This document shows, one piece after another, positions 1 to 34,667 of a DNA stretch of 64,000 nt. The notes beneath the pieces are model-generated. The model ran no database searches. It was not told where the DNA came from and was given only the letters and a program-made list of their open reading frames with translations. The position numbers and the translations under genes were made by a program. The stretch spans positions 62,001 through 126,000 of the IMG/VR virus record IMGVR_UViG_3300005826_000294; one strand, given 5' to 3'. Position 1 is the first letter of the stretch; every line of letters begins with the position of its first letter.

Positions 1-206
1 ATAAGTTTTTTCATAAATTCTATATCTGAAGCATCTCCAATATAGAATTTATGATTTTTATTAAAATATATACGTTTTGTATCTTCTAATCGATTAATAT
101 TGTCGATACTAATTATCTCAAAATTTTTAGACCTATATACAATATAACGAATGAAATTCGCCATTAAAAACCCTGTAGATCCACATACTAAAATTTTTTT
201 TCTCAT
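1..206 (-). CDS. NAD-dependent epimerase/dehydratase, N-terminal fragment (runs off left edge; not in ORF track)
   Basis: Manual translation from ATG at 206: MRKKILVCGSTGFLMANFIRYIVYRSKNFEIISIDNINRLED...FYIGDASD, a Rossmann start resembling RmlB/GalE; AAGGA upstream. Confidence 0.75.
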   Translation of the reverse strand, partial: MRKKILVCGSTGFLMANFIRYIVYRSKNFEIISIDNINRLEDTKRIYFNKNHKFYIGDASDIEFMKKL

Positions 207-236
207 ATTAAAAAATTCCTTGGTTTTTTAGTACTT

Positions 237-1019
237 TTACTTTTTCCCCCATATAAAATGTTCTTCTTCTAATTTTTTTATTTTAAATGGAGGAGTGTTG
301 TTTATTACAATTGAATTTAAATTTCTTCTTTCTAAAGCATTTTGTAATGCCTTTTTAGCATTTAAATCTTGTTCTGTTCTTGATTTTGTTGAGACTTGAT
401 TACTATGTTGTCTATAATAATAAGTTATAGGATCTTTAATTCTATGTATTTTAAATTTTTCATCAATTTTAAGAGCCAAATCATAATCTACAGCAGAAGT
501 TAATTCATTAGAGTATCCACCAACATTTTTTATAACTGATTTTCTATAAAATCTCATAGGAAATAAACACATATATTTAAGAAGAACATTTGAATCATAT
601 TCTCCACTTTTTTCTACATGAGGCAAAACCCATTTTTTTTCATTATTAAAACATATAAAATTACCACAGCAGGCTCCTATATCAGGATGTTTGTCCATAT
701 AATTAACAAAAATTTCTAAACAATTAGTAGGAATTAAATCATCACTTCCAACATGACAAATATATTTATGATCATCTAATTTTTCAATACATTCATTTTT
801 AATTTGTCCTATTTTACCAGAATGTTTCTCTCTTCTATAAAAAGAAAACCTTGAATCTTTTATAGATTTAGTTTTTTCAAATGTTTTATCTTCTGAACAA
901 TCATCTATTAAAATATATTGAAAATTACTATAAGTTTGATTAATAATACTATTAATTGATTCATTTATATATTTTTCAACATTATGTGCTGGAACATAAA
1001 TACCTACTGAATTTAACAT
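237..1019 (-). CDS. GT2-family glycosyltransferase
   Basis: YVPAHNVEKYINESINSIINQTYSNFQYILIDDCSED N-terminus; GSDD (DxD-like); DYDLALKI. Confidence 0.9.
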   Translation of the reverse strand: MLNSVGIYVPAHNVEKYINESINSIINQTYSNFQYILIDDCSEDKTFEKTKSIKDSRFSFYRREKHSGKIGQIKNECIEKLDDHKYICHVGSDDLIPTNCLEIFVNYMDKHPDIGACCGNFICFNNEKKWVLPHVEKSGEYDSNVLLKYMCLFPMRFYRKSVIKNVGGYSNELTSAVDYDLALKIDEKFKIHRIKDPITYYYRQHSNQVSTKSRTEQDLNAKKALQNALERRNLNSIVINNTPPFKIKKLEEEHFIWGKK

Positions 1020-1354
1020 TTTTTCCTCTTAAATAATGGATATTTACATAAATCTAAAGTTCCATTTATGTTTAGAAACCAAACATCAGCATTAAGTCGT
1101 TTATCAATTACACCACTATAACCTGTATAACCATCATCATGCTTTATTGAAACTTGAATATATTTTTTATTAGAATATTTATCTTTATATTCTATAAAAC
1201 TTGCAACAACAGGATTTTTATTATTTAATTGATCTATAGAATTCCATTTATTTCCATTAACCAAATTATTATTTATCCATTTAACTGCTACCTTATTATA
1301 CGAAAGTTTGTCTCCAATTTCAACAAAAAATCTGCTAGAATTGAGAATTTTCAT
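1013..1354 (-). CDS. hypothetical protein
   Basis: Open frame; likely start is ATG at 1354 (AGAGG upstream, TAATG overlap with the upstream gene's stop) rather than 1396. Confidence 0.6.
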   Translation of the reverse strand: MKILNSSRFFVEIGDKLSYNKVAVKWINNNLVNGNKWNSIDQLNNKNPVVASFIEYKDKYSNKKYIQVSIKHDDGYTGYSGVIDKRLNADVWFLNINGTLDLCKYPLFKRKKC

Positions 1355-2301
1355 TAAAAAACCTCTTTGTATGCTTTTTTCATTATACTTTCCCATTTAA
1401 ACATATTAACAGATTTAAGACTATTCTTTATTATATTCTCTCTTTCAGTATCATGATTTAAATAATATTTAATTAAATCAACACAATCACATAAAGAATA
1501 AAACCATACAATATCTTTATGATTTGTAAAATAATTTTCAAGTTTAGGAATGTATTTTGTAATCATTAAATTTCCTGAAGCCATTCCTTCAATCATTCTA
1601 ATAGACCAATAATGTTCTATATTATTGAAATGATTAATATTTAATATTATTTTTGATTTATTATAAAAATCATTAATTTTAGGAAGACTAAAAAATCCTA
1701 AAATATTTTCTTTTGGGATGAATTTATCCCATCCATTTCCTAAAATCTTAATGTTAAAATGTTTTATTAAATAAGATATTATTCCAACTCTCTCAATTGT
1801 TCCGGGGAAACCACTATTTTTATAAACATTTCCAGCAAATACAATATCATATTCTTTATTAATGTTTTTTTTAAAAAATAATAAATCACTAAATCCTTCT
1901 TGTAATATTTTACAATTTAACCCATTTTTTTGATACTCATGTTTTCTTCCTTTTTGAAAGCAAACATCAACATATTTCCCAGCACTAATTGTATATTTAT
2001 CTAATTCATTTCTCATATCAACAGACATAAGAGATATTTTTATATTAGGATGTCTTTCTTTGACTACTTTAAAAAAATCAGGCAAAATAATTGGATTATA
2101 TTGATATTGACAAAAAATCCAGTCTGGTATATGTTCATCAATGAGTTGTAAAATTTGATAATGACCTTCTTTTTGTCCATATTTTCTTATAAATGATCTA
2201 TAACCAAAATAACCTGTTTCTATATCCATATTATTAAGACCATTAACCATTGATATCCCATTTTCTATATATTCAGTTGCTCCAATTATAAAAGTTTTCA
2301 T
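1354..2301 (-). CDS. CgeB-like GT-B glycosyltransferase (Glyco_trans_1_2 type)
   Basis: YDIVFAG...SKIILNINHFNNIEHYWSIRMIEGMASGNLMIT...LENYF; start at 2301 from ATGA overlap. Confidence 0.8.
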   Translation of the reverse strand: MKTFIIGATEYIENGISMVNGLNNMDIETGYFGYRSFIRKYGQKEGHYQILQLIDEHIPDWIFCQYQYNPIILPDFFKVVKERHPNIKISLMSVDMRNELDKYTISAGKYVDVCFQKGRKHEYQKNGLNCKILQEGFSDLLFFKKNINKEYDIVFAGNVYKNSGFPGTIERVGIISYLIKHFNIKILGNGWDKFIPKENILGFFSLPKINDFYNKSKIILNINHFNNIEHYWSIRMIEGMASGNLMITKYIPKLENYFTNHKDIVWFYSLCDCVDLIKYYLNHDTERENIIKNSLKSVNMFKWESIMKKAYKEVF

Positions 2302-3002
2302 AAATCTTTCCATTTTGTTATAATACAATTATGAGGATTTGTTTTTTCTATATTTTTATATTCTCCAATTAAAATAATATTACATCCACAACATAACGCA
2401 AAATCAACCAATCCACTCGGAGGAGATATTAAAAATTCAGAATTATTAAATACATTAATTTGCTCACTAATGTTATTTGTAAATTTAATATTTAAATCAA
2501 ATCTTTCTTTATAAAATCCATGTCCTATTATCTCTTTATTTTGATAGTTGGATTTAATCCATTTAATATGTTCTTTCATTTCAATGTTTTTTTTTGGTCT
2601 TATTGAACGTTTTCGCGGAAATATTGAGATATATCTTTTTACTTTATTTTGTTTTCCAAAAATAAGTTTTTTATTTAGAATATTAAAAACTTTATGAGTA
2701 TCATCATAAAAAAATTTATAATTAGGATCAATAGAAAAAAAGTGTTTAAACCCTTCTGTTTCAAGAAATTTTGTTGTTTCAACATGTCTAAAATGAGTAC
2801 AATCTCTATATTTTTCTTCTAGACTATATTTAACTATATTTTCTATATTTATCGTATCATATCTATTAGGCCATAATAAATTTATTAAATAACATACTGA
2901 TGGCCAAGTAACTAAACTAATATCAACAGTATTAATTTCAAGAAATGGAAGGAGTTGTCTAAAAATATATCCAAATTCTCCAAGAAAATAAAGTTTTTCC
3001 AT
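2298..3002 (-). CDS. putative GT-B glycosyltransferase (weak GT9-like), paralog of 7224-7928
   Basis: KLYFLGEFGYIFRQLLPFLE matches KLYFIGEYGFGFRQLFPFLE; C-terminal QINVFNNSEFLISPPSGLVDFALCCGCNIILI resembles the GT9 C-terminal lobe. Confidence 0.5.
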   Translation of the reverse strand: MEKLYFLGEFGYIFRQLLPFLEINTVDISLVTWPSVCYLINLLWPNRYDTINIENIVKYSLEEKYRDCTHFRHVETTKFLETEGFKHFFSIDPNYKFFYDDTHKVFNILNKKLIFGKQNKVKRYISIFPRKRSIRPKKNIEMKEHIKWIKSNYQNKEIIGHGFYKERFDLNIKFTNNISEQINVFNNSEFLISPPSGLVDFALCCGCNIILIGEYKNIEKTNPHNCIITKWKDL

Positions 3003-3111: not shown

Positions 3112-3795
3112 TCATTTTTTTATAACATATGCTGTTGGACAAACATAATCTAAAGATTTAACCAACACTCCTTTATTTTTAAAAAATTCATCAACACCAA
3201 TACTTTCTGACCACTTATGATAAGCATATTCATCAAATATTACAATACCACCTATAGAAACCCTATTCCAAAAAGATCTTAAAGCATAATATGTAGGATC
3301 ACAAAGATCAAAATCCATATAAAGTAAAGATATTTTAAATCCAGGGTTTTTTAAGATATATTCTGGAGCAGTATTTTTTATATCTCCTTTAATTAGTTCA
3401 AAATCTCTATCAACAAACCCAGCATTCAATATTTTCTCTCTAACATCATTTAATGAATGGGCATTATGTTTAATATTACGACTACTAAACAAATTTTTCA
3501 TTTCCTCTGCATCTCGACCACTTATTGTATTTAATAACTTATCTGTTTCAAAAAAATCAAAACCTATAACTCTTTTTATAGAATTTGAAAAAAAGATTTT
3601 TTTTAATTTAAGAAAAGTGACCATTCCAGAGCCTATAAAAACTCCACATTCTACAATATCTCCTGGTATTTGTTTTGTTTTATCAACAAAAAGAGATCTA
3701 GCAACTAATTTTCCTAATACTTTTGTTTCATCTGTGAAAATAAAATCATTAAAAGAATTGTATGTCTCTTTTAAAGTATTATCAAAAATATCCAT
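3112..3795 (-). CDS. TylF/MycF-family sugar O-methyltransferase
   Basis: IPGDIVECGVFIGSG, GFDFF, LIKGDI..T, ISLLYMDFDLCDPT, GGIVIFDEY. Confidence 0.88.
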   Translation of the reverse strand: MDIFDNTLKETYNSFNDFIFTDETKVLGKLVARSLFVDKTKQIPGDIVECGVFIGSGMVTFLKLKKIFFSNSIKRVIGFDFFETDKLLNTISGRDAEEMKNLFSSRNIKHNAHSLNDVREKILNAGFVDRDFELIKGDIKNTAPEYILKNPGFKISLLYMDFDLCDPTYYALRSFWNRVSIGGIVIFDEYAYHKWSESIGVDEFFKNKGVLVKSLDYVCPTAYVIKK

Positions 3796-3797
3796 AA

Positions 3798-5150
3798 TTA
3801 TTTTCCATATTTATTAATCCATTTCTGTAAAAGCAAAGATCCAAGAAGATAAGAATAAGCAACAGATAAAACATTACTTTTAACATATTCTGTAACAGAA
3901 AGCCATATAATAGAAAGAAGAAAATCAATTTTTCTACCATATGATTTTATATTCTCAACTTCAAAACCATTACTACTTATAGGTAATAAGCATCCTCTAT
4001 TTAATAAATGCCAATTAGTTTTAGAGTAATATATTTTTGCTATATCATAATCAGCATCACCATATAAAAGAGAATTACCAAATATTCCTCTAGGATCTAT
4101 TACATAAGGAATATTATTTTCCCATAAAACATTTGATGAAGTAAGATCTCCATGTATTGGAACAAAACGATTAGGAACCATCTCCTCTATATTAATCTTA
4201 TTTAGATTAATTAATGGATTTAAACATTCTGTTTTATTTACTATAAATTTCTCACCAAAATTAGTTAAAAAACTAATTTTATTTAATCTTGAAATTGTCT
4301 TATCAATATACATATATTTACAATCTTCTAAAGAACTTGGAATAGAAGGTTTAAATATATGTATAAGATTAGCAATATAATACAAAGGTTTAATTTTATA
4401 AAACTTCTTAACACCATTTATTTTTTTCATTGTTAAAGGGTTATATGAAATTATATTTGGTATAAAACAAAAACCATTCATATTTTTATACCAATTCTCT
4501 TCTGAATTACGTAATTTTATATTCTTACACTCTTTAATTACAATATTATCTTTAATTGTAATAGTATTAAATGATCTTATAGGGTTTTTACAAGAAATTA
4601 ATTTTTTATTATATTTTTTAGTATCTCCAATATCAATAGCAGGAATAACAACTTCTTCAAAATCTTTAATATTAATAGCATCTAATAATGTTATTTCTCT
4701 ATTTAAATTAGGTAAAACTTTTGGATAAGTAATTTCATTTTTATTCCAAAGAAAAACACCATAAATTCCACCATTTTTTCCATTAAATGAGCATAAAATA
4801 TTAGGACTACTAAAAAAAATATTTTTATTGGTTGTGGGTTTTTCTAAAGGTAAAACATCACACCAATTAAGAATAACTCTGTTATTTTTAGATCTTAACA
4901 ATCCTGATTGTACAGCATATCCAGATCCTTTTCTATTTTCAACAACATATATATATTTATTTTCAGTATATTGTTTAACAATATTTAATATATTATCTCT
5001 AACAACTATAATTACTTCATCAGCATTCCAAAATTCTATAATATGATTAATAATTGCTTTATTATATAAAGGTAATAATAACTTTGGATATATAAATTTC
5101 TTTAATCTTAAACCTAATCCAGCAGATGGAATTATAAGAGAAGTTTTCAT
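3798..5150 (-). CDS. sugar-phosphate nucleotidyltransferase fused to an APH/choline-kinase-like phosphotransferase
   Basis: N-terminal LIIPSAGLGLRL...PKLLLPL; C-terminal HGDLTSSNVL and VIDPRG kinase motifs. Confidence 0.8.
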   Translation of the reverse strand: MKTSLIIPSAGLGLRLKKFIYPKLLLPLYNKAIINHIIEFWNADEVIIVVRDNILNIVKQYTENKYIYVVENRKGSGYAVQSGLLRSKNNRVILNWCDVLPLEKPTTNKNIFFSSPNILCSFNGKNGGIYGVFLWNKNEITYPKVLPNLNREITLLDAINIKDFEEVVIPAIDIGDTKKYNKKLISCKNPIRSFNTITIKDNIVIKECKNIKLRNSEENWYKNMNGFCFIPNIISYNPLTMKKINGVKKFYKIKPLYYIANLIHIFKPSIPSSLEDCKYMYIDKTISRLNKISFLTNFGEKFIVNKTECLNPLINLNKINIEEMVPNRFVPIHGDLTSSNVLWENNIPYVIDPRGIFGNSLLYGDADYDIAKIYYSKTNWHLLNRGCLLPISSNGFEVENIKSYGRKIDFLLSIIWLSVTEYVKSNVLSVAYSYLLGSLLLQKWINKYGK

Positions 5151-6094
5151 ATATTTTTTCCTATAGTTCCACCAGAATGGTTTAATAAATAATCTTCACG
5201 GTTACATCTATAACTATATGTAATTACTTTTAAAATTGAAAAATAAGTTTTTAAATATTCTTGTATTGTAATTTGTGGACTAAAACCAAGAAACGAATTT
5301 TCAATAATATTATCTATAACTAATATATTTTTAAAATAAGGAATAGCTTTAGCATTTGAATTAGAAGTTATTAAAAAGGTATTTAATTTATTAAACTTTT
5401 TATATAATGATTTCATCATATTTATTAATTCTTCAGTATCTCCAGATTTGGAAGAAGCAATAACAATATCATTTATATTAATTAGTCCTAAACTTCCATG
5501 AGAACTATGATTAGCATCTAAAGGAACAGCAACAATATTATAAGGAAGAAAAAATTCACTAACCAATTGAGCCAAAGAAAAATTCTTACCAACCCCAGTA
5601 ATTACTATTTTTCCAGAAATAGAATCTCTTATTTTTTTAGCAAAACTTAATATATTTTCTTTTCTTATCCAATTTAATATATGAGGAAAAACATTTTTTC
5701 CAGCTAATGTGGGCAATATAAAATCAGAATTATTTTTTGCTTGTGGTGTTGAATCATTTAAACAAAGATTTATTAAAGCATTAGGTTCATTAATTCCATC
5801 TCCAACATATACACAAGGCATATTTTCATCTATAAGTTTTTGTCTTTCTTCAACTTTACTAAAAATATAGTTAATTCCCATTTCTTTACATCTTATTTCA
5901 TTAATTTTAGATCCAGAAGATGTATTATCTGCAGAACATAATATTATTTCATTAAAATATTTCTTTAGAATAGGAATTGAAGGCCGATCATTACTACTAA
6001 AAGATTTTACTATTTTTCCATCAATTGAATAAAAATGCTCACCAGATGTTATTATTCCATCTATATCACAGATTAATTTCATTATTTTCTCCAC
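5147..6094 (-). CDS. KdsC-like HAD phosphatase fused to KdsD/GutQ-like SIS sugar-phosphate isomerase
   Basis: CDIDGIITSG and YVGDGINE (HAD); KIVITGVGK...HGSLG...SSKSGDTEE (SIS); no CBS domains. Confidence 0.8.
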   Translation of the reverse strand: MEKIMKLICDIDGIITSGEHFYSIDGKIVKSFSSNDRPSIPILKKYFNEIILCSADNTSSGSKINEIRCKEMGINYIFSKVEERQKLIDENMPCVYVGDGINEPNALINLCLNDSTPQAKNNSDFILPTLAGKNVFPHILNWIRKENILSFAKKIRDSISGKIVITGVGKNFSLAQLVSEFFLPYNIVAVPLDANHSSHGSLGLININDIVIASSKSGDTEELINMMKSLYKKFNKLNTFLITSNSNAKAIPYFKNILVIDNIIENSFLGFSPQITIQEYLKTYFSILKVITYSYRCNREDYLLNHSGGTIGKNI

Positions 6095-15585: not shown

Positions 15586-15849
15586 TTATATAAACCATTC
15601 AGCAAATCTACTTAATATATTATGTTTTATATAATATTCCAAATCTTTCATTTCTTTAACTTTTCCAGATAGTTCCGGGTCAATAATTTTTGAATAATCA
15701 ATATATTTTATAGTTGTCCAAAATCCATCAATTGCTATCATTTTGGCCACCATTTGCTTCGTATATTTAAATATATCAGGCATAGTGTAATGTTCTAAAA
15801 TTAATAGAAAATATATATATAAAATGCTACTTTTTAATAGTCTTTTCAT
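15586..15849 (-). CDS. hypothetical protein
   Basis: 87-aa ORF, ATGA-coupled to the upstream gene. Confidence 0.55.
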   Translation of the reverse strand: MKRLLKSSILYIYFLLILEHYTMPDIFKYTKQMVAKMIAIDGFWTTIKYIDYSKIIDPELSGKVKEMKDLEYYIKHNILSRFAEWFI

Positions 15850-17198: not shown

Positions 17199-17216
17199 AC
17201 TTTAAAAGGATCACAT

Positions 17217-22628: not shown

Positions 22629-22629
22629 A

Positions 22630-26714: not shown

Positions 26715-26716
26715 TT

Positions 26717-28260: not shown

Positions 28261-29014
28261 AATAGTTCTCCATTATATCATTTATATGTTTAATCCATTT
28301 TTCAAATTCTAACGTTCCTTTTCCACTATTACATATTTTACAACATGAAACTAAATTATTTTCTATATATCCTTTTGAATTATCAATTCTATCTAAATTT
28401 ATAACATTTGTAATAGTTCCACAATAAAAACAAGGTTTTCCTAAAAATGATTTAAATTCTTCAAATGATATTAAAAATTCAAAATTTCTTCTTGAAGCAC
28501 TATAAATATAATTTTTAAATTGTCTATTTAATCCATAATTATATTTATGTTTATAATTATATTCAATTTTTCTTAAAGTTTTATATCTGATAAAATTTTT
28601 AAGTTGACATATATAATCATTCCAATCTTTAATTGTTTGATTATTTTTTAACTTATTACAAATAATACAACAAGAAACTACGTTATTATAATAATATCCA
28701 AGATTATTATCTATCCTGTCTAAACTAATTGTTTCTATCTCATTACTACAATAAAAACATGGTTTATTCCAAAATGTTTTAAACTCTTTAAATGATATTG
28801 AAAAAATAATATTTCTTTCTTTCGCTTTTGTTTTATATTTACTAAATTTACCATTTATAGTTTTAGAATATAATTTTGCTTTTTTATTATTTTTTTCTTT
28901 ATTTTTGTAATAATGTAATCTACTTGCTTCTCTTCCACAATCTTTACACCAAGAACTTTTTGGATAAAAATTACAACTATTTTTTTCTAATTTACATTTA
29001 CTACATTTTTTCAT
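28247..29014 (-). mobile_element. duplicated HNH/His-Me-finger-like endonuclease; probable free-standing homing endonuclease
   Basis: N-terminal CSKC...WCKDC; two copies of KPCFYC...LDRIDN..GY...N.VSCC..CN..K. Confidence 0.75.
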
Positions 29015-29847
29015 AATTTTCCAGATATAGATAATTTCATTAATTCAAAATAAGGGTCATATATTATTTTTTTATCACTTTGAGTATGTTTCCATCCAGT
29101 TGGATAATAAGAATTTTCTAATATTCGAAACTCATGGTAATGATAACAAATAAGATTATATTTATCATTTACTATTAATTTATTATTTTCTTTTGTAATT
29201 TTATATTTGGCAATATTCCATGGTCCCATATTTATACCAGGATGTGGACAAGAAAGATGATTTTGAAATTTATTAGGAGTATCATATAAAATATTTAAAT
29301 ATCCCTGATCTGCACACATTCCATTTGGTAATGTTTCCCATTTACACCATTCTAAACATCGTTCTTTCCACCATAAAAGAAATTCTTTACAATAATTATC
29401 ATTTCGATATCCTAATATCCCAACATTAAATCTAACACCAGATCTTGGTGGTTCAAATCCATGGTCTACAACCATCAAAGAGTAATCCCCCATAACTTGT
29501 TCTATTTCATTTGGATCAGACCAAAAAGCAATGTCGGCATCAGTATAATATAATGTATTTATATAGCTAAAATTATTAAAGATATATAAAGGTAATATTG
29601 GAGATATAGTTGCATAATATTCTTTTAATAATCTTGTATGTTTAATAGTAACAAGTTCTGGAAATTGATTTTCTAAATCTTTTAATTTAATTAGTATTAC
29701 ATTATTTAATTTAGAAGAAATATTATAAACATTATCATCTAAACATAATATAAATAATATACTATTTTTATCTTGTTTATGAAGAGTATAATTACAAACC
29801 AAACCTTTATTAAAATAATTAGAATCAAAATATGTACAAAAATACAT
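29011..29847 (-). CDS. GT-A glycosyltransferase (GT8-like), paralog of 40872-41735
   Basis: CTYFDSNY, LCLD, YYTDADIAF, FNVG, WWKERCLEWC, DQGYLN, LICYHY. Confidence 0.75.
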   Translation of the reverse strand: MYFCTYFDSNYFNKGLVCNYTLHKQDKNSILFILCLDDNVYNISSKLNNVILIKLKDLENQFPELVTIKHTRLLKEYYATISPILPLYIFNNFSYINTLYYTDADIAFWSDPNEIEQVMGDYSLMVVDHGFEPPRSGVRFNVGILGYRNDNYCKEFLLWWKERCLEWCKWETLPNGMCADQGYLNILYDTPNKFQNHLSCPHPGINMGPWNIAKYKITKENNKLIVNDKYNLICYHYHEFRILENSYYPTGWKHTQSDKKIIYDPYFELMKLSISGKL

Positions 29848-31358
29848 TAGAACGTCTCCACTTTTATTATTGCATTTTCAGAACCCCAATCTATATGTTC
29901 ATTTGCTACTGGATTTTTATATTTTATCCATTCATGTAAAAAATTAGTATTTATAGTTCTTAATCTTTTCCACTCTCTTTTATCATATCTAAAAGAATGT
30001 AAATCATTTTTATCATTTCTTGTATGATCTTGATGAATTCCAACTATTCTATGTTCTCTAATAAGTGGAACTCCAGAAAAAGACATTCGTAAAGCAAAAT
30101 CATCATCTTCACCAGTTATTCCCTTCATAAATTTTTCATCAACTCCATTTATAGCAAGAATATGTTCTTTACGAACTGCAATATAATACCACCACCATCC
30201 AAAAGTTACTGAAGGATCTGCTTTTGCTCCGGGAATTTCTAAAATATTATCAAAATCCATATATTTTATATTTATTTTTTTCACTTCATTAACAAATTTT
30301 TCTGATGATCTAAAAACATCACCGTAAACACAATATCCTTTATTTGCCATTTCCCATGATATTTTTAAATTATCTTCTTTTATAAGAGTTTCTGGCCCAG
30401 TTATAACAGTTACAGATCCTCGACTATGTTTTAATCCAATATTATTACTTAATGCTGGCACAAATGATGCTGGTTTAATTGCTCCTTTTTGATTATCAAT
30501 TAATATATATTTAAATTGTAATCTATATTCTCTTGAAAATTGTTTACATAAACCTAAAATATTATCTTTACTTTTATCATCAATAATAACTATTTCAAAT
30601 TCTTTTTTTGGTAAAGTTTGTTTTATATATGTTTCAAGAGTTCTTCTAAAAAATCCAATTCTATTATAAATTGAAATAAGAATAGAAACTTTTATACCAT
30701 CTTCTCCAATAACTACTGGTAAAATTTTAGGAGGAGGAGTTGCTACATCAATTCTTGTTGGTAATGTAACAGGTTTATTTTTCTTTCGTTTCGGTACTTT
30801 TATTTCTTCTTTTGCTTGTTTAGCTCTTTCTTTTTTTTCTATTTTAGGGTTTTTTACCATTTTTTGAGCAGGGCGCTGAGGAGGTTGCTTATATTCTGCA
30901 GGATTTGGGGATTTGGGACCAAATCCATCAATAGAAATAACTTTTCCTATTGTGTTAATATTATCTACAGGACCCTCTTCAAGTTGAACAATTATCTTAC
31001 GTACTAAAATACTACCACTTCCTTCACTACCTCTCCATATCCTAAAAACCATAGGAACAGTTTTAGGAAAATCTTTTGTTATTACATCAACATCAAATGT
31101 TGTCCAATTTCCATTTTCACATAAAATTTTTGAATGATGAAAATCATAATTTCTGTTTCCATATAAATTACAATATATTATTCCATTTCCACTTTCTCTG
31201 CATAGTTCTAATGTAACTTTATAAACAGCATTTGGTAAAATATTTACGGGAATATATAACAGTGATTTAGGACCAACCATAGCTGTGTATTTTCGTCCAT
31301 TAGAGTCTTTTCTACTGTTAATTGAACGTCCTCGCCAAGATGGTTGAAATATTTCCAT
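29847..31358 (-). CDS. GT2 glycosyltransferase with shared N-terminal domain and Lys/Pro-rich linker
   Basis: C-terminal ILISIYNR, EIVIIDD, NGVDEKF...GEDDDF; N-terminus similar to 7922-9319. Confidence 0.85.
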   Translation of the reverse strand: MEIFQPSWRGRSINSRKDSNGRKYTAMVGPKSLLYIPVNILPNAVYKVTLELCRESGNGIIYCNLYGNRNYDFHHSKILCENGNWTTFDVDVITKDFPKTVPMVFRIWRGSEGSGSILVRKIIVQLEEGPVDNINTIGKVISIDGFGPKSPNPAEYKQPPQRPAQKMVKNPKIEKKERAKQAKEEIKVPKRKKNKPVTLPTRIDVATPPPKILPVVIGEDGIKVSILISIYNRIGFFRRTLETYIKQTLPKKEFEIVIIDDKSKDNILGLCKQFSREYRLQFKYILIDNQKGAIKPASFVPALSNNIGLKHSRGSVTVITGPETLIKEDNLKISWEMANKGYCVYGDVFRSSEKFVNEVKKINIKYMDFDNILEIPGAKADPSVTFGWWWYYIAVRKEHILAINGVDEKFMKGITGEDDDFALRMSFSGVPLIREHRIVGIHQDHTRNDKNDLHSFRYDKREWKRLRTINTNFLHEWIKYKNPVANEHIDWGSENAIIKVETF

Positions 31359-31366: not shown

Positions 31367-33604
31367 TTACTCCCTATTTTTAAATAATAAATTATATAAA
31401 TGATTAATATTGAAATTATTTGCTTTTTCTCTTGCCGCACGAGATACTGTTCGACAATTAAAAGAACATTTTTCTAATAATTTCCTATTGTTCTTGAATT
31501 TTTGAATTTCTCGAATAAATAAAGCAGGATTGTTTGAATTCCAAACCAAACTACCAGTAATTCCATCAAATACTATCTCCGAAATGGCTCCTACATCTGA
31601 AGCAATAACTGGAACTCCAGCCATCATTGCTTCCAAAATAACAAGAGGCATTCCCTCCATGGTTGAAGGAAGAATTAATAAATCAAAAGTAGCATAAAAC
31701 TCTTCAACATTGTCTTTTGATCCAATAAAACACACATTGTTTAATTGCTTCGCCATTTGTTCTAAAGGTTTTCTTTGAGGCCCGTCTCCAACAATTACAA
31801 AAGAAGCATCTGGAATTACTTTAGCACAATATAATATAATAGGAATATTCTTTTCAGGAGATAATCTTCCAACAAAACCTATAGTAAAATTTTCATTTAA
31901 TTTTTTCTCAACATTAAATCTTTCCCAATCAATTTGTTGAGGAAGAACAGCAACATTCTTATTACCATCTTTTAATAACTTTCTCCCCATCTTATTTGAA
32001 ACAGCCGTTATTAATGTAACATGTTCTCCGCGAGATGAAACTTTATTCATAGAATCATTCCAACTTAATTCGCTATGAACTGTTTCTACAATTCTACGCC
32101 TAAAACCTTGCTTCCATGCTTCTTGAATAACTCTATATACTCCAAAACTATTATAAAAATGAATTATACTATAATTTTCAGCTTCAATAAGGCATTTTAA
32201 TGCTTTATCTCTTCCCGAAGATGATAAATCCTCTATAATAACTCCCATATCTTTCAAAGATTGTTTAAACTTTTCTTCAGTTCCAGATATTAAAGCTACA
32301 TGAGGTTCATAAATTGATTTATTTAATTGAGAAATTGCTTGCTTAATCCATATCTCACCACCACCAACCATTTTATATGGAATAATATATAAAACTTTTC
32401 TTTTTATAGAAAGTTTTTTTGGAATAGGAAGATCTAAAATCATTTGAGCAGCATTTTCCCAAGAGAATTTTTTAACAATCTCTCTGGCTGGATTTTTAAT
32501 CCTCTTCAACTCCTTATCAAGATTTTTATAAGAATGATATAATAATTCTTTAAAATTTTCAATACTAGGATCTCCTACAACAGCACCTTTCATAACTCCC
32601 CAATACTGCATAGAATTTGGAGCTTCCATTTCTCCTGTATCAACCAATAAAGAATTATCATCATTTAAGAAATCTAATTGTCCTCCGTGTCTTGGAGCTA
32701 TAACCAATTTTTCGCAAGCTAAGGCCTCAAGAAGAGGTAAGCAAAAACCTTCCGTAGCACTCATACTAATAACTACATCACAAGCAGTATATAATGCTCC
32801 CATACTTGGAATAAATGTATTTACAACTTCAATCTCAGGAGGATTTTTCTTTCCTTTAAGATTATTTTCAATAATGGATTTTACATCAACTTCAAAAGGC
32901 TTAGTTTTATCAGGAGTTATAAATTGGGTTTTTAAAACTAAACAAACATCATCTTTGCTTGTGAATGTCTCAATATAACCTTTGATTACCCTTTCATGGA
33001 GTTTTCTATGGTGAGGAATAGCATTATGAAGGAATTTTACTTTTTTGTTTGTTTTTAATTTAAAAGGAGTAATATTGGGATTGAAAATAGTTTGATCAAC
33101 ACCATGAGGGACAATTAACATCTTATTTTTAGGAACACCATTATTAGCAAAAATATCATATGAAAATTGGCTTGAAGGAAGAATATAATCTATTGCCCTG
33201 CTATAATACTGCCATCCAGGAGGTAATACCGAACTCTCAAAGTTCCATATGGCCGCTTTACATTTGGACTCAGGAAAGAAACGCCTTGGATATTGATAAA
33301 ATATTGTATATGCTAATTCTAAATCATAAGGTCTGTTTTTGTCTTCAATTTCGGGTTTAGGTTGTTCTTTTGTAACAATAATCTCATTACCTTGCCCATC
33401 AACATATTCCGTGGGACCTTGAACCAAATGCCCATGATAACCAGAAAGTAAAATATCTTTTAAATCTTCAGGAAAATATTCTAATCCATTTGTGGATTTA
33501 AAATATATTTCATGTTCGGTTTTCTTCATTGCTCTGGCCAATGCTTGAGCTGTATAACTCCACGAATGGTTAGTTGCTCCCATTGTATGCCATCTTACTT
33601 TCAT
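31367..33604 (-). CDS. tandem two-domain GT4 glycosyltransferase
   Basis: First domain EGFCLPLLEALAC; second FVGRLSPEKN...EGMPLVILEAMMAGVPVIASDVG. Confidence 0.92.
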   Translation of the reverse strand: MKVRWHTMGATNHSWSYTAQALARAMKKTEHEIYFKSTNGLEYFPEDLKDILLSGYHGHLVQGPTEYVDGQGNEIIVTKEQPKPEIEDKNRPYDLELAYTIFYQYPRRFFPESKCKAAIWNFESSVLPPGWQYYSRAIDYILPSSQFSYDIFANNGVPKNKMLIVPHGVDQTIFNPNITPFKLKTNKKVKFLHNAIPHHRKLHERVIKGYIETFTSKDDVCLVLKTQFITPDKTKPFEVDVKSIIENNLKGKKNPPEIEVVNTFIPSMGALYTACDVVISMSATEGFCLPLLEALACEKLVIAPRHGGQLDFLNDDNSLLVDTGEMEAPNSMQYWGVMKGAVVGDPSIENFKELLYHSYKNLDKELKRIKNPAREIVKKFSWENAAQMILDLPIPKKLSIKRKVLYIIPYKMVGGGEIWIKQAISQLNKSIYEPHVALISGTEEKFKQSLKDMGVIIEDLSSSGRDKALKCLIEAENYSIIHFYNSFGVYRVIQEAWKQGFRRRIVETVHSELSWNDSMNKVSSRGEHVTLITAVSNKMGRKLLKDGNKNVAVLPQQIDWERFNVEKKLNENFTIGFVGRLSPEKNIPIILYCAKVIPDASFVIVGDGPQRKPLEQMAKQLNNVCFIGSKDNVEEFYATFDLLILPSTMEGMPLVILEAMMAGVPVIASDVGAISEIVFDGITGSLVWNSNNPALFIREIQKFKNNRKLLEKCSFNCRTVSRAAREKANNFNINHLYNLLFKNRE

Positions 33605-34500
33605 TTATTTCTCCTTATATCACACATTCTTAATTTCTTATCAATTGTAATTTTAGCACAACCGAATTTTTCTGCTATTTGTTTTCTTGTTAGTTTTTGA
33701 ATAATATATAAATTATATAGAGTTTCTTTGGAAATATCTATTTTATAATTTATTTTTCCAATGGGATTAAGATCCCATTTATATGATAAAGATTTAAAAG
33801 GAGGCTTGCCGATATATTCTAATAATAAAGGAACAGAGGTTTTAGGAATAAATATCCTATAATCTTTCTTATAATTCATAACAGATGATTTTATTTGTAT
33901 TTCTTTGTTTAACTTATAAGAAAGAAAATTTATTTCATTATAACTAAAACAATCAGTACAGAAAATAGCATATTCTTTATTAGGAAGAGAACCATCTCCT
34001 AAATACCAATGAAGAACAAGATTTGGGGAAATTTTTAAATCAGGAATTATCTTCTTTCTATTTATATACCACTTTTTTTCTAACTCTTCAAACTGTATAG
34101 AACAATGCGTTGAAAATATATATCTTGTATACCATTTGTTCCAGTTCTTATGATAATATCTTTCTTTTTGAATACTATTATTAACTAATGGTATATTGCT
34201 ATCCTTAAAAAAATTAGAAAGCCATACAGCATAATCTTCCTTGCAACTAGAAAAACAAAACTTAGCTTGATGTGTTCTTTTAGTTAAAGATCCATCTCCC
34301 AATAATTCTCCCTCTATTCTTTGTATTATCTCTTTATTAAGAGGATAATTATTTTGTTTTGCTAATCTCAAACCCTCTCCAGATGTCCTTAACTTCGTAT
34401 TCTTTAACAAAATTTTTCTAGTTTTTGATGGAGAAATTCCAACTTTCTTTGCTATTTGACGAATAGAGAATCCTTTCTTATAAAACTCTACAATTCTCAT
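33601..34500 (-). mobile_element. free-standing LAGLIDADG homing endonuclease with terminal HTH-like segments
   Basis: IEGELLGDGSL and VLHWYLGDGS; GFSIRQIAKKVGIS and LTRKQIAEKFGC; ATGA overlaps on both sides. Confidence 0.88.
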
Positions 34501-34667
34501 TTCTTTGGATAAACCAAAGGAAGTCCCTTATGTTCTTTATATAAATTGGCAATTATTTCTCTTAAAACAGCGGTAATTGTTTTAAAATTCTCTTTTGAAT
34601 ATTGAGCAAGAAAATCATATAACTCTCTTTCAATTCTTATATTAATTTGTTTTCTATTATCATCCAT
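34497..34667 (-). CDS. 56-aa ribbon-helix-helix DNA-binding protein (not in ORF track)
   Basis: AAGGAG RBS; MDDNRKQINIRIERELYDFLAQYSKENFKTITAVLREIIANLYKEHKGLPLVYPKK* has the alternating strand plus two-helix RHH pattern; TGA overlaps the next ATG. Confidence 0.8.
   Translation of the reverse strand: MDDNRKQINIRIERELYDFLAQYSKENFKTITAVLREIIANLYKEHKGLPLVYPKK

What the first reader, a model, noticed from the sequence alone, without database searches (positions are those of the whole stretch)
1..34667. A >34-kb phage glycan-building operon abutting the virion genes, with no export machinery visible
Seen: about 40 mostly overlapping genes (ATGA/TAATG junctions) encoding about 13 glycosyltransferase-like proteins (GT2, GT4, CgeB-like, GT47-like, GT8-like, GT9-like), routes to GDP-fucose, UDP-sulfoquinovose and a dTDP-3-amino-6-deoxyhexose, four methyltransferases and two sulfotransferase-like proteins, directly downstream of fibre and baseplate genes. 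I see no Wzx/Wzy, ABC transporter, polyprenyl-phosphate initiating transferase or multi-TM protein. Known: giant viruses (chloroviruses, Mimiviridae) glycosylate capsids and fibrils with their own enzymes; bacterial surface-glycan loci normally carry export genes. Inference: the operon builds a methylated, anionic glycan in the cytoplasm on virion proteins rather than on the host surface.
Basis: partly seen in the sequence, partly recalled or inferred. Interest (0 to 1): 0.85.

Follow-up and report, generated by a model that had tools for sequence, protein, structure and literature searches.

The report
Jumbo-phage glycan island beside tail fibres
A 300-kb sediment phage carries about 40 tightly packed sugar-building genes with no export machinery, right after its tail-fibre genes, and one glycosyltransferase is welded to a fibre gene in most sampled relatives, which makes coating of the phage's own fibres the leading but unproven reading.

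Summary
Window 1-34,500 is a dense minus-strand block with 12 well-supported and 2 tentative glycosyltransferase genes. It holds routes to GDP-fucose, UDP-sulfoquinovose, a dTDP-3-amino-6-deoxyhexose and a fourth, unidentified activated sugar. It also has three supported methyltransferases and two sulfotransferase-fold proteins. I found no initiating transferase, flippase, polymerase, ABC transporter or multi-TM protein in the window, in 48 kb to its left, or in the sampled parts of four relatives' clusters (complete in one).

The source is a roughly 300-kb myovirus from Columbia River estuary sediment. Relatives (GC 0.29-0.62) keep a cluster after their fibre genes, led by the same double GT4, with mosaic content. 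Codon GC3 matches the structural genes, so the island is native.

New here: the island reaches 41,735. A GT8-fold gene (pLDDT 92, invariant DxD and His) overlaps the distal fibre gene and precedes a Gly-rich repeat protein. This pair recurs in six of seven lineages, including one without the big cluster.

Virion (fibre) glycosylation is therefore the best reading (about 0.45). Host-surface remodelling, the published reading of similar jumbo-phage clusters, remains a serious rival (about 0.28). About 178 kb of the genome was not examined.

The parts
1..203 (-). 5' part of the last cluster gene, a 276-aa SDR/epimerase-like protein that continues about 630 nt left of the window
   Evidence: L009 10814-11644: weak Pfam Epimerase hit. 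The same terminal gene lies before the tubulin-like gene in relative L022.
237..1019 (-). GT2 glycosyltransferase
   Evidence: PF00535, E 5e-25. 62%-identical ortholog in L010.
1013..1396 (-). 127-aa protein of unknown function
   Evidence: No family hit.
1354..2328 (-). CgeB-like GT-B glycosyltransferase
   Evidence: PF13524, E 1.7e-20.
2298..3002 (-). GT9-like (heptosyltransferase-like) protein, paralog of 7224-7928
   Evidence: 47% identity, E 1e-82. Family assignment comes through the paralog.
3112..3795 (-). TylF-like sugar O-methyltransferase
   Evidence: PF05711, E 3.7e-14.
3798..5150 (-). Fusion of a nucleotidyltransferase with an APH-fold kinase; predicted sugar-1-kinase plus NDP-sugar pyrophosphorylase
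   Evidence: NTP_transf_3 E 2.8e-5 and APH E 4.8e-4. The function is inferred.
5147..6094 (-). Fusion of a KdsC-like HAD phosphatase with a KdsD/KpsF-like SIS sugar-phosphate isomerase
   Evidence: NCBIfam kpsF 1.4e-11 and KdsC 1.5e-7, all far below the curated cut-offs. Together with 3798-5150 it supplies the four activities of an NDP-heptose-like or Kdo-like route (inference).
6082..7239 (-). UDP-sulfoquinovose synthase (SQD1/SqdB/Agl3 type)
   Evidence: NF041015, E 1.3e-150, 502 bits against a cut-off of 575. Full-length match to Arabidopsis SQD1 1qrr, E 1e-106, with the SFYHxxKVHDS motif kept.
7224..7928 (-). GT9-like protein
   Evidence: ESM Atlas: feature score 0.97 and TM 0.71-0.77 to GT9-named clusters that are mostly viral. 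No Pfam hit.
7922..9319 (-). CgeB-like GT-B glycosyltransferase with a 320-aa N-terminal extension
   Evidence: PF13524, E 2.2e-23.
9383..10699 (-). Protein of five DUF4379 treble-clef zinc fingers; probably not a glycan gene
   Evidence: PF14311, E 1e-85. At least two further DUF4379 proteins lie in the left flank.
10689..12878 (-). GDP-mannose 4,6-dehydratase interrupted by a 398-aa LAGLIDADG intein (about 11313-12506)
   Evidence: PF16363 1.9e-97 and Intein_splicing 3.4e-14. Alignment to the uninterrupted L022 ortholog places the insert in the catalytic S|TSE motif, ending VHN|T.
12878..13795 (-). GDP-L-fucose synthase
   Evidence: NF047922, E 1e-78.
13812..14639 (-). GT2 glycosyltransferase
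   Evidence: PF00535, E 1.8e-5. 52-64%-identical orthologs in L012, L026 and L033.
14646..15575 (-). GSCFA-family protein of unknown function
   Evidence: PF08885, E 3.7e-40.
15586..15849 (-). 87-aa protein of unknown function
   Evidence: No hit.
15846..16562 (-). Short radical-SAM/SPASM-like protein with Cx8C in place of CxxxCxxC
   Evidence: SPASM 6e-10 and Radical_SAM 4e-5; sequence read. Full-length rSAM/SPASM genes sit in relatives' clusters.
16524..17198 (+).
   Evidence: No family or PDB hit.
17217..17918 (+). Sulfotransferase family-2 fold protein
   Evidence: Atlas feature score 0.96 and TM 0.78 to Sulfotransfer_2 clusters. Pfam only E 0.08.
17909..18373 (-). 154-aa protein of unknown function
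   Evidence: No hit.
18339..19079 (-). Possible GT-A glycosyltransferase, unverified
   Evidence: Only PF00535 at E 0.3.
19076..20446 (-). Fusion of a beta-phosphoglucomutase-like HAD domain with a sugar-1-phosphate nucleotidyltransferase
   Evidence: HAD_2 3.4e-28. NCBIfam bPGM family 4.5e-24 and rmlA_long 7e-16.
20443..21210 (-). NanM-like sugar O-methyltransferase
   Evidence: TIGR04371, E 2.3e-9, 37 bits against a cut-off of 44.
21207..21878 (-). Probable GT-A fold protein, tentative
   Evidence: Model pLDDT 57. Foldseek hits to GT-A enzymes and same-fold nucleotidyltransferases. Orthologs in L013, L026 and L033.
21891..22661 (-). Glucose-1-phosphate thymidylyltransferase (RmlA)
   Evidence: PF00483 1.2e-48; TIGR01208 1e-59.
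22630..23550 (-). dTDP-glucose 4,6-dehydratase (RmlB)
   Evidence: TIGR01181, 375 bits, above the cut-off of 365.
23547..24614 (-). DegT/DnrJ/EryC1-type sugar aminotransferase
   Evidence: PF01041, E 1.5e-61.
24611..25015 (-). FdtA-type dTDP-4-keto-6-deoxyhexose 3,4-isomerase
   Evidence: PF05523, E 2.4e-41.
25002..25931 (-). GT47 (exostosin-like) glycosyltransferase
   Evidence: PF03016, E 7.9e-10. 60%-identical ortholog in L026.
25959..26726 (-). Sulfotransferase family-1/3 fold protein
   Evidence: Atlas feature score 0.96 and TM 0.65. Its L026 homolog carries a faint Sulfotransfer_3 hit.
26717..27604 (-). GT2 glycosyltransferase
   Evidence: PF00535, E 7.5e-6. 60-72%-identical orthologs.
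27601..28260 (-). Class-I SAM methyltransferase
   Evidence: Methyltransf_23, E 5e-14.
28247..29014 (-). Tandem HNH-like zinc-finger protein, probably a homing endonuclease
   Evidence: Read by eye from the translation. No Pfam hit.
29011..29847 (-). GT8-like glycosyltransferase, the copy inside the cluster
   Evidence: 37% identity, E 5e-59, to the modelled fibre-linked paralog. One or two orthologs each in L026, L032 and L033.
29847..31358 (-). GT2 glycosyltransferase with a 220-aa N-terminal extension
   Evidence: PF00535, E 2e-11.
31367..33604 (-). Double-GT4 protein, the conserved lead gene of the cluster
   Evidence: Two Glycos_transf_1 stretches, E 4.6e-47. 53-63%-identical orthologs open the clusters of L012, L013, L014, L026 and L033.
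33601..34500 (-). Free-standing LAGLIDADG homing endonuclease with an HTH domain
   Evidence: PF03161, E 6e-23. Absent from relatives.
34766..37732 (-). 988-aa protein in a fibre position with foreign composition (GC 0.51, GC3 0.48)
   Evidence: No homolog found anywhere.
37735..39747 (-). 670-aa tail-fibre-like protein
   Evidence: PHROG tail-protein hits.
39794..40900 (-). 368-aa Gly/Asn/Ser-rich repeat protein (31% Gly); candidate acceptor or fibril
   Evidence: Homologs with the same N-terminus follow the fibre-linked GT8 gene in L025, L027, L029, L030 and L031.
40872..41735 (-). Fibre-linked GT8-fold glycosyltransferase
   Evidence: AlphaFold model pLDDT 92, pTM 0.91. Foldseek probability 1.00 to LARGE1, Skp1 alpha-GalT, LgtC, glycogenin and GlyE. 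D104, D106 and H237 are invariant in 20 sequences. It shares 1 nt with the fibre gene and 29 nt with the Gly-rich gene.
41735..43483 (-). 582-aa distal tail-fibre protein
   Evidence: PHROG tail fiber hit. Orthologs precede the GT8 gene in L027 and L029, and L025 has a C-terminally similar fibre in that position.

Best explanation
**What it is.** The block is a long-resident glycan-synthesis island of a roughly 300-kb myovirus.

**How it most likely works.**
- Soluble phage enzymes make several activated sugars in the infected cell's cytoplasm: GDP-L-fucose, UDP-sulfoquinovose, a dTDP-3-amino-3,6-dideoxyhexose, and a fourth sugar from an isomerase/phosphatase plus kinase/nucleotidyltransferase pair.
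- About 13-15 soluble glycosyltransferases assemble these sugars.
- O-methyltransferases and PAPS-dependent sulfotransferases decorate the product.
- No lipid carrier and no export step is involved.

**Most likely acceptor.** The phage's own tail-fibre apparatus, modified before or during assembly. A GT8-fold enzyme encoded between the distal fibre gene and a Gly/Ser/Asn-rich repeat protein would act on one of those two proteins. The larger cluster would extend or diversify the glycan.

**Shown.** The enzyme families, the gene order, its conservation, and the absence of export genes in the regions examined.

**Inferred.** The acceptor, the order of the steps, the identity of the fourth sugar, and any role of the Gly-rich protein.
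For: 1. The enzyme content is as stated.
2. No PGT, Wzx, Wzy or ABC family, and no protein with two or more TM-like segments, was found in any of these places:
   - the window cluster;
   - 48 kb to the left, which holds tubulin-like, UvsW, DnaB, RNR and ThyA genes;
   - the sampled cluster regions of relatives L020/L021, L022/L023 and L026, and, by hydropathy only, the cluster part of L033. The L022/L023 cluster was seen whole, from the double GT4 to the tubulin-like gene.
3. The slot is conserved. The cluster starts right after the fibre genes with a 53-63%-identical double GT4 in L012, L013, L014 and L026, whose GC ranges from 0.30 to 0.57. L033 has the same lead gene, but its fibre side was not seen.
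4. GC3 is 0.06-0.18 in glycan and structural genes alike, so the island is native and not a recent host import.
5. The fibre-linked GT8 gene overlaps both neighbours. It has an invariant DxD and His. It is followed by the Gly-rich protein in 6 of 7 lineages. These include L025, where neither Pfam nor tblastn found any other glycan gene in the 10 kb before its DnaB-primase. They also include L031, a more distant contig, where the GT8 domain is fused to a GNAT domain next to Baseplate_J.
6. In the window, three fibre-like genes lie inside the island, between the first glycosyltransferase and the double GT4.
7. Several of the best GT8 fold matches act on proteins or protein-bound glycans: glycogenin, Skp1 GalT, GlyE, LARGE1, XXYLT1.
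8. There is a precedent: phage-encoded glycosylation of capsid and tail-tube C-termini in mycobacteriophages (Freeman 2023, as cited in PMC12619734).
Against: - No experimental datum exists for this phage, and no acceptor site is identified.
- Absence of export genes is also compatible with use of host carrier and export functions.
- About 178 kb of the 312.6-kb contig was not examined.
- The best NCBIfam matches of several glycosyltransferases are EPS, LPS or teichoic-acid enzymes. LgtC, an LOS enzyme, is also among the GT8 fold matches.
- From general knowledge, genes that modify the host receptor can also sit next to receptor-binding-protein genes, as in epsilon15.
- The island's other flank is the replication module, so position alone does not fix expression timing.
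- The promoter/terminator scan was uninformative.
- The Gly-rich protein is not shown to be a virion component.
Confidence: 0.45

Rival explanations
1. Host-envelope remodelling. The phage glycosyltransferases act at the inner face of the host membrane on host-primed undecaprenyl-linked intermediates or LPS core. Host flippases, ABC transporters and ligases then export the altered glycan. The infected cell's surface changes, which masks the receptor, excludes rival phages, or stops progeny from adsorbing to infected cells and debris.
For: - This is the published reading of comparable clusters in jumbo cyanophages, which hold isomerases, kinases, nucleotidyltransferases and many glycosyltransferase families and are polymorphic between related phages (PMC7824862). 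One such phage has 13 glycosyltransferases (PMC12801897).
- Gene content between relatives is mosaic, as in O-antigen and CPS loci.
- The family flavour fits envelope glycans: GT9-like proteins, a KdsC/KdsD-like fusion, and EpsD-, EpsE- and stp2-like best matches.
Against: - None of the sampled clusters encodes the initiating transferase, flippase, polymerase, ligase or transporter.
- From general knowledge, Wzx and Wzy usually prefer their cognate repeat unit, so a foreign 13-enzyme glycan would depend on a permissive host exporter.
- The lead glycosyltransferase evolves at the pace of structural genes, and GC3 is native.
- The GT8 plus Gly-rich pair stays with the fibre genes even without the cluster.
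Confidence: 0.28
2. A non-virion, non-envelope product: a sulfolipid (SQDG-like), a soluble or secreted oligosaccharide, or a glycosylated small molecule or peptide made during infection.
For: - In bacteria and plastids, SQD1/SqdB normally feeds sulfolipid synthesis (general knowledge; PMC13436972).
- TylF-, DegT- and FdtA-type enzymes also decorate macrolide sugars (general knowledge).
- A radical-SAM/SPASM gene is conserved in the clusters.
Against: - No SqdX-specific match was found, and there are no PKS, NRPS or precursor-peptide genes in the cluster.
- The number and diversity of glycosyltransferases points to a polymer or a large oligosaccharide.
- The sulfoquinovose module is an insertion specific to this phage. 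It is absent from the sampled regions of relatives that keep the core cluster.
Confidence: 0.09
3. DNA hypermodification. The glycosyltransferases glycosylate hydroxymethylated bases in phage DNA to evade restriction.
For: - Phage glycosyltransferases that build glycans on DNA are known (Pyle 2024, cited in PMC12619734).
- The island abuts the replication module.
Against: - The genome encodes a canonical thymidylate synthase (327 bits), with DHFR next to it and a thymidylate kinase nearby.
- No hydroxymethylase and no T4-type DNA glycosyltransferase family appeared in the roughly 121 kb examined.
- Methyl- and sulfotransferases, four sugar routes and about 14 glycosyltransferases far exceed any DNA glycan I know of.
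Confidence: 0.04

Closest known systems
Polysaccharide/LPS gene clusters of jumbo cyanomyoviruses (P-SSM2, S-SCSM1, S-SCSM2R), called 'capsular polysaccharide modification systems' by Iyer et al. 2021 (PMC7824862; PMC12801897)
   Same: - Large myoviruses.
- Clusters hold sugar isomerases, kinases, nucleotidyltransferases, NDP-sugar epimerases or dehydratases and many glycosyltransferase families.
- Content varies between related phages.
- Few or no dedicated transporters are reported in the passages I read (one PgaA-type export protein in S-SCSM2R).
- The function has not been tested.
   Different: - Here there is one contiguous 35-41-kb block in a fixed slot after the tail fibres.
- It includes UDP-sulfoquinovose synthase, two sulfotransferase-fold proteins and a 3-amino-sugar route.
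- A GT8 gene is coupled to a fibre gene.
- No sequence-level relatives were found among 50,697 GenBank phage records for the SQD1, GT9-like, CgeB-like, GT8-like or Gly-rich proteins.
Virion glycosylation of mycobacteriophages (Freeman et al. 2023; paper not held, summarised in PMC12619734)
   Same: - Phage-encoded glycosyltransferases modify phage structural proteins in the cytoplasm without export.
- The tail module here is distantly related to cluster C mycobacteriophages and to Bacillus phage G.
   Different: - From the summaries I read, those systems have far fewer genes and target the C-termini of capsid and tail-tube subunits.
- Here there are about 40 genes, with whole nucleotide-sugar routes and sulfation.
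- The genomic link here is to fibre genes.
- Only weak GT4 similarity to actinophage glycosyltransferases was found (22-27% identity).
Autonomous glycosylation machinery of giant viruses (chloroviruses, Mimiviridae); comparison from general knowledge
   Same: - Virus-encoded nucleotide-sugar routes.
- Soluble glycosyltransferases and methyltransferases.
- GT8-fold proteins are common in giant viruses.
   Different: - The host here is a prokaryote and the virus a tailed phage.
- To my knowledge, sulfoquinovose and sulfotransferases are not part of the described giant-virus glycans.
Cytoplasmic protein O-glycosylation in bacteria: serine-rich-repeat adhesins (GtfA/B plus GT8 enzymes such as GlyE) and spore crust or exosporium glycosylation (CgeB, BclA); general knowledge plus fold hits
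   Same: - Soluble GT4, GT8 and GT2 enzymes build glycans directly on repetitive Ser/Thr/Gly-rich proteins, with no lipid carrier.
- GlyE and glycogenin are among the GT8 fold matches.
- Two CgeB-family proteins are present.
   Different: - No sequence-level orthology to GtfA/B, SdgA/B or GlyE exists beyond family level.
- The acceptor is not demonstrated.
Bacterial O-antigen, CPS and EPS loci
   Same: - Nucleotide-sugar routes plus glycosyltransferases plus tailoring enzymes in one operon-like block.
- Mosaic evolution.
   Different: The defining membrane steps (initiating PGT, Wzx/Wzy or ABC transporter, chain-length or ligase functions) are absent here and in the sampled parts of the relatives' clusters.

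Membership tests
Wzx/Wzy- or ABC-transporter-dependent surface polysaccharide locus | Initiating polyprenyl-phosphate glycosyl/phosphoglycosyl transferase (WecA/WbaP/PglC type) | tested here: not met
   No PF00953 or PF02397 hit in the window ORFs, in the left 48 kb, or in the sampled clusters of relatives.
Wzx/Wzy- or ABC-transporter-dependent surface polysaccharide locus | Flippase/polymerase or ABC permease (multi-TM proteins) | tested here: not met
   The hydropathy scans found no cluster protein with two or more TM-like segments in the window or in L010, L015-L018, L020, L022, L026 and L033. About 178 kb of the genome was not examined.
Wzx/Wzy- or ABC-transporter-dependent surface polysaccharide locus | Nucleotide-sugar synthesis genes and several glycosyltransferases in one block | tested here: met
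Jumbo-phage polysaccharide-modification cluster (Iyer et al. 2021) | A jumbo phage with a cluster of sugar isomerase, kinase, nucleotidyltransferase and several paralogous glycosyltransferase families, polymorphic among related phages | tested here: met
   The contig is 301.7-312.6 kb with myovirus tail genes. Content. Mosaic content among relatives. Definition taken from PMC7824862.
Phage virion glycosylation system (mycobacteriophage type) | Phage-encoded soluble glycosyltransferases | tested here: met
Phage virion glycosylation system (mycobacteriophage type) | Glycan covalently attached to virion structural proteins | not testable with these tools
   This needs purified virions and glycoproteomics. 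The only indirect evidence is the gene linkage of GT8 with the fibre and Gly-rich genes.
Phage virion glycosylation system (mycobacteriophage type) | Acceptor tails at the C-termini of capsid and tail-tube subunits | tested here: inconclusive
   The tail-tube protein (L019 650-1285) ends in a G/S/T-rich stretch of about 55 aa. The capsid gene was not reached, and this feature was not compared across relatives.
GT8 retaining glycosyltransferases (for 40872-41735 and, by paralogy, 29011-29847) | GT-A fold with a DxD motif and a downstream His as metal ligands | tested here: met
   Model pLDDT 92. Foldseek probability 1.00 and TM 0.5-0.6 to LgtC, glycogenin, LARGE1 and GlyE. D104, D106 and H237 are invariant in 20 sequences. 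The metal-ligand role is inferred from LgtC and glycogenin (general knowledge). No Pfam GT8 hit.
UDP-sulfoquinovose synthase (SQD1/SqdB/Agl3) | Full-length match to the family model, with the catalytic S/T-Y-K plus His motif | tested here: met
   NF041015, E 1.3e-150, 502 bits, below the curated cut-off of 575. Residues 6-385 align to Arabidopsis SQD1 at E 1e-106, with FYHxxK kept and Thr to Ser at the first catalytic position. Activity is untested.
T4-type DNA glycosylation | dNMP hydroxymethylase plus a DNA-specific glycosyltransferase | tested here: not met
   The only ThyA-family gene found is a canonical thymidylate synthase next to DHFR. No DNA glycosyltransferase family was found. 178 kb was not examined.
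Sulfotransferases (17217-17918 and 25959-26726) | Match to a sulfotransferase family model above threshold | tested here: inconclusive
   Pfam E 0.05-0.08, below threshold. Atlas feature score 0.96 and structure TM 0.65-0.78 to sulfotransferase clusters. PAPS-binding motifs were seen by eye only. Relatives carry a clear Sulfotransfer_3 gene that is not detectably similar to either.
Moraphages (Perez-Hernandez et al. 2025, PMC12619734) | Membership of the described clade of 200-307-kb aquatic phages with four core glycosyltransferase orthogroups | not tested
   Size, habitat and glycosyltransferase content are similar, but no moraphage sequence was available for comparison.

The most novel reading that the evidence does not exclude
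A lineage of 300-440-kb phages makes a proteoglycan-like tail appendage. A GT8 enzyme primes a dedicated Gly/Ser/Asn-rich repeat protein or the distal fibre. The downstream island (double GT4, GT2, GT47, GT9-like and CgeB-like enzymes) extends the glycan. The product is a fucose-, amino-sugar- and sulfoquinovose-containing, O-methylated and O-sulfated heteroglycan, made wholly in the cytoplasm by phage enzymes. To my knowledge this would be the first sulfonated or sulfated glycan found on any virus particle, and a hypervariable determinant of adsorption or of evasion.
Probability: 0.25. Interest if true: 0.85.

Novelty: new variant of a known kind. Interest (0 to 1): 0.6.

Why it matters
- **An open question becomes testable.** Glycosyltransferase-rich islands are a recurrent and never-tested feature of jumbo phages, usually assumed to remodel the host surface. 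This lineage offers a small, concrete test: one fibre gene, one GT8 gene and one Gly-rich gene that travel together.
- **If the fibre or the Gly-rich protein is glycosylated:**
  - virion glycosylation would extend from actinobacteriophages to environmental jumbo phages;
  - the mosaic islands would be re-read as diversity of the virion surface rather than of the host surface;
  - sulfoquinovose and sulfation would be added to viral glycobiology.
- **If the product goes to the host envelope:** it would be a clear case of a phage depending on host carrier and export steps for a very large imported pathway.

Tried and rejected
**Considered and rejected**
- Low GC as a sign of recent host import. 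The island has GC 0.25 against 0.31 for the structural genes, but GC3 is the same (0.06-0.18), so the difference comes from amino-acid composition.
- A giant-virus origin. Baseplate J, gp25-like and Phi812-type tail-tube genes show a myovirus.

**Uninformative or negative**
- The sigma-70 promoter and terminator scan of 15.1-35 kb gave counts at chance level, so it says nothing about operon structure or timing.
- Sequence searches of PDB for 29011-29847, 21207-21878, 18339-19079, 16524-17198 and 17909-18373 found nothing meaningful.
- The PDB sequence search for the double GT4 returned only generic GT4 matches.
- Pfam at E up to 10 for ten unassigned ORFs gave only sub-threshold hints.
- Neither window sulfotransferase-like protein shows pairwise similarity to the clear Sulfotransfer_3 of relative L022.
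- Bacillus phage G, the nearest cultured relative by baseplate, has no glycan cluster after its fibres.
- Rfam and tRNA scans of the window found nothing.

**Inconclusive**
- Host inference from PrkA gave only 35-37% identity to Syntrophomonadaceae MAGs, by a pattern-limited scan. No host call is possible.
- The origin of the GC-rich 988-aa ORF is unresolved. No homolog was found in GenBank phages, in IMG/VR by pattern scan, or in the fetched relatives.
- The model of 21207-21878 has low confidence (pLDDT 57), so its GT-A assignment is tentative.

**Not achieved**
- One look-up was lost to a wrong gene start.
- A whole-genome survey was not feasible. I examined contig positions of about 13.9-134.9 kb out of 312.6 kb.
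- Whether this phage belongs to the moraphages could not be tested.

Full report
**Source and setting.** The window is part of IMG/VR contig IMGVR_UViG_3300005826_000294 (301,683 bp). The metagenome is Columbia River estuary sediment (PMC6848030). Nearly all genes lie on the minus strand. The right half of the window encodes a myovirus tail:
- a gp6/Baseplate_J-like wedge protein (53267-56503);
- a gp25-like protein (56505-56963);
- fibre-like proteins;
- a Phi812-type tail tube just beyond the right edge.

The nearest cultured relatives by baseplate protein are distant, under 30% identity: Bacillus phage G and cluster C mycobacteriophages. This is a jumbo phage, not a giant virus.

**Checking the observation.**
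- *Glycosyltransferases with Pfam support:* four GT2 genes, two CgeB-like GT-B genes, one GT47-like gene, and one protein with two GT4 domains.
- *Glycosyltransferases with other support:*
  - The GT9-like call for 7224-7928 rests on ESM Atlas features and predicted structure. It extends to 2298-3002 by 47% identity.
  - The GT8-like call for 29011-29847 rests on 37% identity to a paralog that I modelled at pLDDT 92. That model matches LgtC, glycogenin, LARGE1, Skp1 galactosyltransferase and GlyE.
  - Two further candidates are weak: 21207-21878 (GT-A fold from a low-confidence model) and 18339-19079.
- *Sugar routes:*
  - GDP-fucose, from an intein-interrupted GMD plus Fcl.
  - UDP-sulfoquinovose. 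The synthase scores 502 bits to the NCBIfam equivalog. It aligns over its full length to Arabidopsis SQD1 at E 1e-106, with the FYHxxK motif kept.
  - dTDP-3-amino-3,6-dideoxyhexose, from RmlA, RmlB, FdtA and a DegT-type aminotransferase.
3798-5150 is a fusion of a nucleotidyltransferase with an APH-fold kinase. Together they supply the four activities of an NDP-heptose-like or Kdo-like route. They sit between the two GT9-like genes. The sugar's identity is an inference.
- *Glucose supply:* 19076-20446 fuses a beta-phosphoglucomutase-like domain with a nucleotidyltransferase.
- *Tailoring enzymes:* three methyltransferases are supported, and a fourth is not. The two sulfotransferase-like proteins fail Pfam thresholds but match sulfotransferase clusters by features and by fold.
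- *Packing:* 26 of 41 junctions overlap, and only three gaps reach 50 nt.

**Absence of export machinery.**
- *In the window:* no PGT, Wzx, Wzy or ABC family is hit, and no cluster protein has multiple hydrophobic segments.
After one more SDR-like gene come the following:
  - a tubulin/FtsZ-like gene, an RF-1-domain gene, UvsW and DnaB;
  - a PrkA-DUF444-SpoVR trio and a sigma-factor-like gene;
  - an intein-bearing ribonucleotide reductase and an IS607-like element;
  - thymidylate kinase, an endolysin, thymidylate synthase and DHFR.

  None of the ORFs of 80 aa or more on the gene-bearing strand across these 48 kb has two or more TM-like segments.
- *In relatives:* the same is true of the clusters I could sample.
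- *Limit:* contig positions 1-13.9 kb and 134.9-312.6 kb were not examined.

**The island is a lineage feature.** Related contigs of 93-441 kb, with GC from 0.29 to 0.62, carry the cluster. In L012, L013, L014 and L026 it lies immediately after the fibre genes, and in all of these and L033 it is opened by a 53-63%-identical double GT4.
- In L022/L023 the whole cluster is only 14 kb. Its order is: double GT4, MT, CgeB-like, GT2, rSAM/SPASM, MT, GT2, Sulfotransfer_3, MT, Fcl, GMD, a 194-aa gene, GT2, SDR. It ends, as in the window, at the tubulin-like, UvsW and DnaB genes.
- L020/L021 and L026 share the dTDP-amino-sugar module, GT47, methyltransferases and GT8 copies.
- The window version is the largest seen. 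Its sulfoquinovose/GT9-like/CgeB-like module (about 1.3-9.3 kb) has no GT9-like, SQD1, fusion-enzyme or TylF counterpart in the sampled regions of the relatives.
- GC3 is 0.06-0.18 in glycan and structural genes alike. The lower overall GC of the island therefore reflects amino-acid composition, not recent import.
- Homing elements are frequent:
  - a LAGLIDADG intein in the catalytic S|TSE motif of GMD;
  - a free LAGLIDADG gene, an HNH-like gene and a DUF4379 protein in the window;
  - GIY-YIG genes in relatives.

**A glycosyltransferase inside the fibre module.** ORF 40872-41735 lies between the 582-aa distal fibre gene and a 368-aa protein with 31% glycine, built of GGN and GTN triplet runs with Ser-rich stretches.
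- It is the GT8-fold paralog described above, with D104, D106 and H237 invariant in 20 homologs.
- It shares 1 nt with the fibre gene and 29 nt with the Gly-rich gene.
- Orthologs follow a fibre gene in L025, L027, L029 and L030; L032 keeps only a short fibre-like stretch there. In L031 the GT8 gene follows Baseplate_J and a 347-aa protein.
- A Gly-rich protein with the same conserved N-terminus follows the GT8 gene in six of seven lineages.
- In L025, Pfam and tblastn found no other glycan gene in the 10 kb between this trio and the DnaB-primase. The pair therefore travels with the fibres, not with the island.
- In L031, a 48.5-kb contig of a more distant phage, the order is Baseplate_J, a 347-aa protein, a GT8::GNAT fusion, the Gly-rich protein, then a radical-SAM enzyme.
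- In L013/L032 the GT8 gene lies about 1 kb before the double GT4. In the window, three fibre-like genes and a homing endonuclease lie between them. The island therefore really spans from about 1 to 41,735, with fibre genes interleaved.

**Weighing the readings.** The virion-glycosylation reading gains from six points:
- the missing membrane steps in every sampled cluster;
- the fixed slot after the fibres;
- the native codon usage;
- the lead gene evolving at the pace of structural genes;
- the fibre-GT8-Gly-rich trio;
- the precedent in mycobacteriophages (cited in PMC12619734).

It stays unproven. No acceptor is identified, and the Gly-rich protein is not shown to be in the virion. Receptor-modifying genes can also sit beside receptor-binding genes. 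The literature reads similar jumbo-phage clusters as host-surface remodelling (PMC7824862; PMC12801897).

DNA glycosylation is unlikely. The genome has a canonical thymidylate synthase, with DHFR next to it and a thymidylate kinase nearby. No hydroxymethylase appeared in the 121 kb examined. The tailoring chemistry has no DNA precedent that I know of. A sulfolipid or small-molecule product is possible for the sulfoquinovose module alone, but it does not explain the conserved core.

My estimates:

| Reading | Estimate |
|---|---|
| Virion (fibre) glycosylation | 0.45 |
| Host-surface remodelling | 0.28 |
| Other product (sulfolipid, soluble glycan, small molecule) | 0.09 |
| DNA glycosylation | 0.04 |
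| Unassigned | the remainder |

**Novelty.** Glycosyltransferase-rich clusters in jumbo phages are known, and so is phage virion glycosylation. Four things are new here:
- the size and chemistry of the block: about 40 genes, sulfoquinovose, sulfotransferase-fold proteins and four sugar routes;
- its fixed position;
- the conserved GT8 plus Gly-rich pair in the fibre module;
- the lack of sequence relatives for the SQD1, GT9-like, CgeB-like, GT8-like and Gly-rich proteins among 50,697 GenBank phage records.

A viral UDP-sulfoquinovose synthase has one earlier metagenomic mention (PMC7785012). A pattern-limited IMG/VR scan found one other contig with a close homolog. I rate this a new variant of a known kind.

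Noticed in passing
window 34766-37732 (GC-rich part about 35,500-37,600): A 988-aa ORF in a fibre position has GC 0.51 and GC3 0.48, while every other gene in the window has GC3 0.06-0.18. No homolog was found in GenBank phages, in IMG/VR by pattern scan, or in the fetched relatives. It is either a very recent import from a high-GC donor (the lineage spans GC 0.29-0.62) or an assembly chimera.
   Followed up: partly
window 10689-12878 (intein about 11313-12506): GDP-mannose 4,6-dehydratase carries a 398-aa LAGLIDADG intein inserted in the catalytic S|TSE motif and ending VHN|T. The ortholog in relative L022 is uninterrupted and 72% identical in the exteins.
   Followed up: yes
window 33601-34500, 28247-29014, 9383-10699; L020 13830-14543 and 15478-16602: The island is riddled with selfish elements. 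The window has a free LAGLIDADG endonuclease, a tandem HNH-like protein (read by eye) and a protein with five DUF4379 zinc fingers. A relative has GIY-YIG genes between its DegT, RmlB and RmlA genes.
   Followed up: partly
L015 3628-5028 (contig about 59.8-61.2 kb, just left of the window); L022 14330-15784: A tubulin/FtsZ-family gene directly follows the glycan island, then UvsW and DnaB. The arrangement is conserved in a relative. None of the regions examined holds a multisubunit RNA polymerase gene.
   Followed up: no
L015 15986-21377 (also L016 5455-11187): The phage encodes a PrkA-DUF444-SpoVR trio (the YeaG/YeaH/YcgB or sporulation-associated set). A 183-aa gene and a sigma-70-like factor follow it. 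The closest cellular PrkA proteins found are only 35-37% identical (Syntrophomonadaceae MAGs, pattern-limited scan), so no host call is possible.
   Followed up: partly
L016 11187-14564, 17258-18975, 18987-19781: The ribonucleotide reductase large subunit carries an intein. An IS607-like serine-resolvase plus TnpB pair sits in the phage genome. A PhoH gene carries a LAGLIDADG_3 hit.
   Followed up: no
L019 650-1285 (tail tube, right of the window): The Phi812-type tail-tube protein ends in a stretch of about 55 aa rich in Gly, Ser and Thr. This resembles the kind of C-terminal tail reported as glycosylated in mycobacteriophages. It was not compared across relatives.
   Followed up: no
window 15846-16562; L031 9984-11129; L022 5976-6968: The window's radical-SAM/SPASM-like protein is short (238 aa) and has Cx8C where CxxxCxxC is expected, whereas relatives have 330-aa versions. 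In L031 a radical-SAM gene with a CNFRCRYC motif (read by eye) directly follows the Gly-rich protein. This hints that the radical-SAM enzyme may act on that protein.
   Followed up: partly
window 16524-17918: Two genes, an unknown 224-aa protein and the sulfotransferase-2-fold protein, are the only plus-strand genes in 64 kb. This suggests a later inverted insertion into the island.
   Followed up: no
L031 7992-9287: In a more distant phage (48.5-kb contig, GC 0.62) the fibre-module GT8 domain is fused to a C-terminal GNAT acetyltransferase domain.
   Followed up: partly
window 58600-60609: A 669-aa tail-module protein has two long, strongly hydrophobic stretches plus a weaker third. It is the only membrane-like protein in the window.
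   Followed up: no
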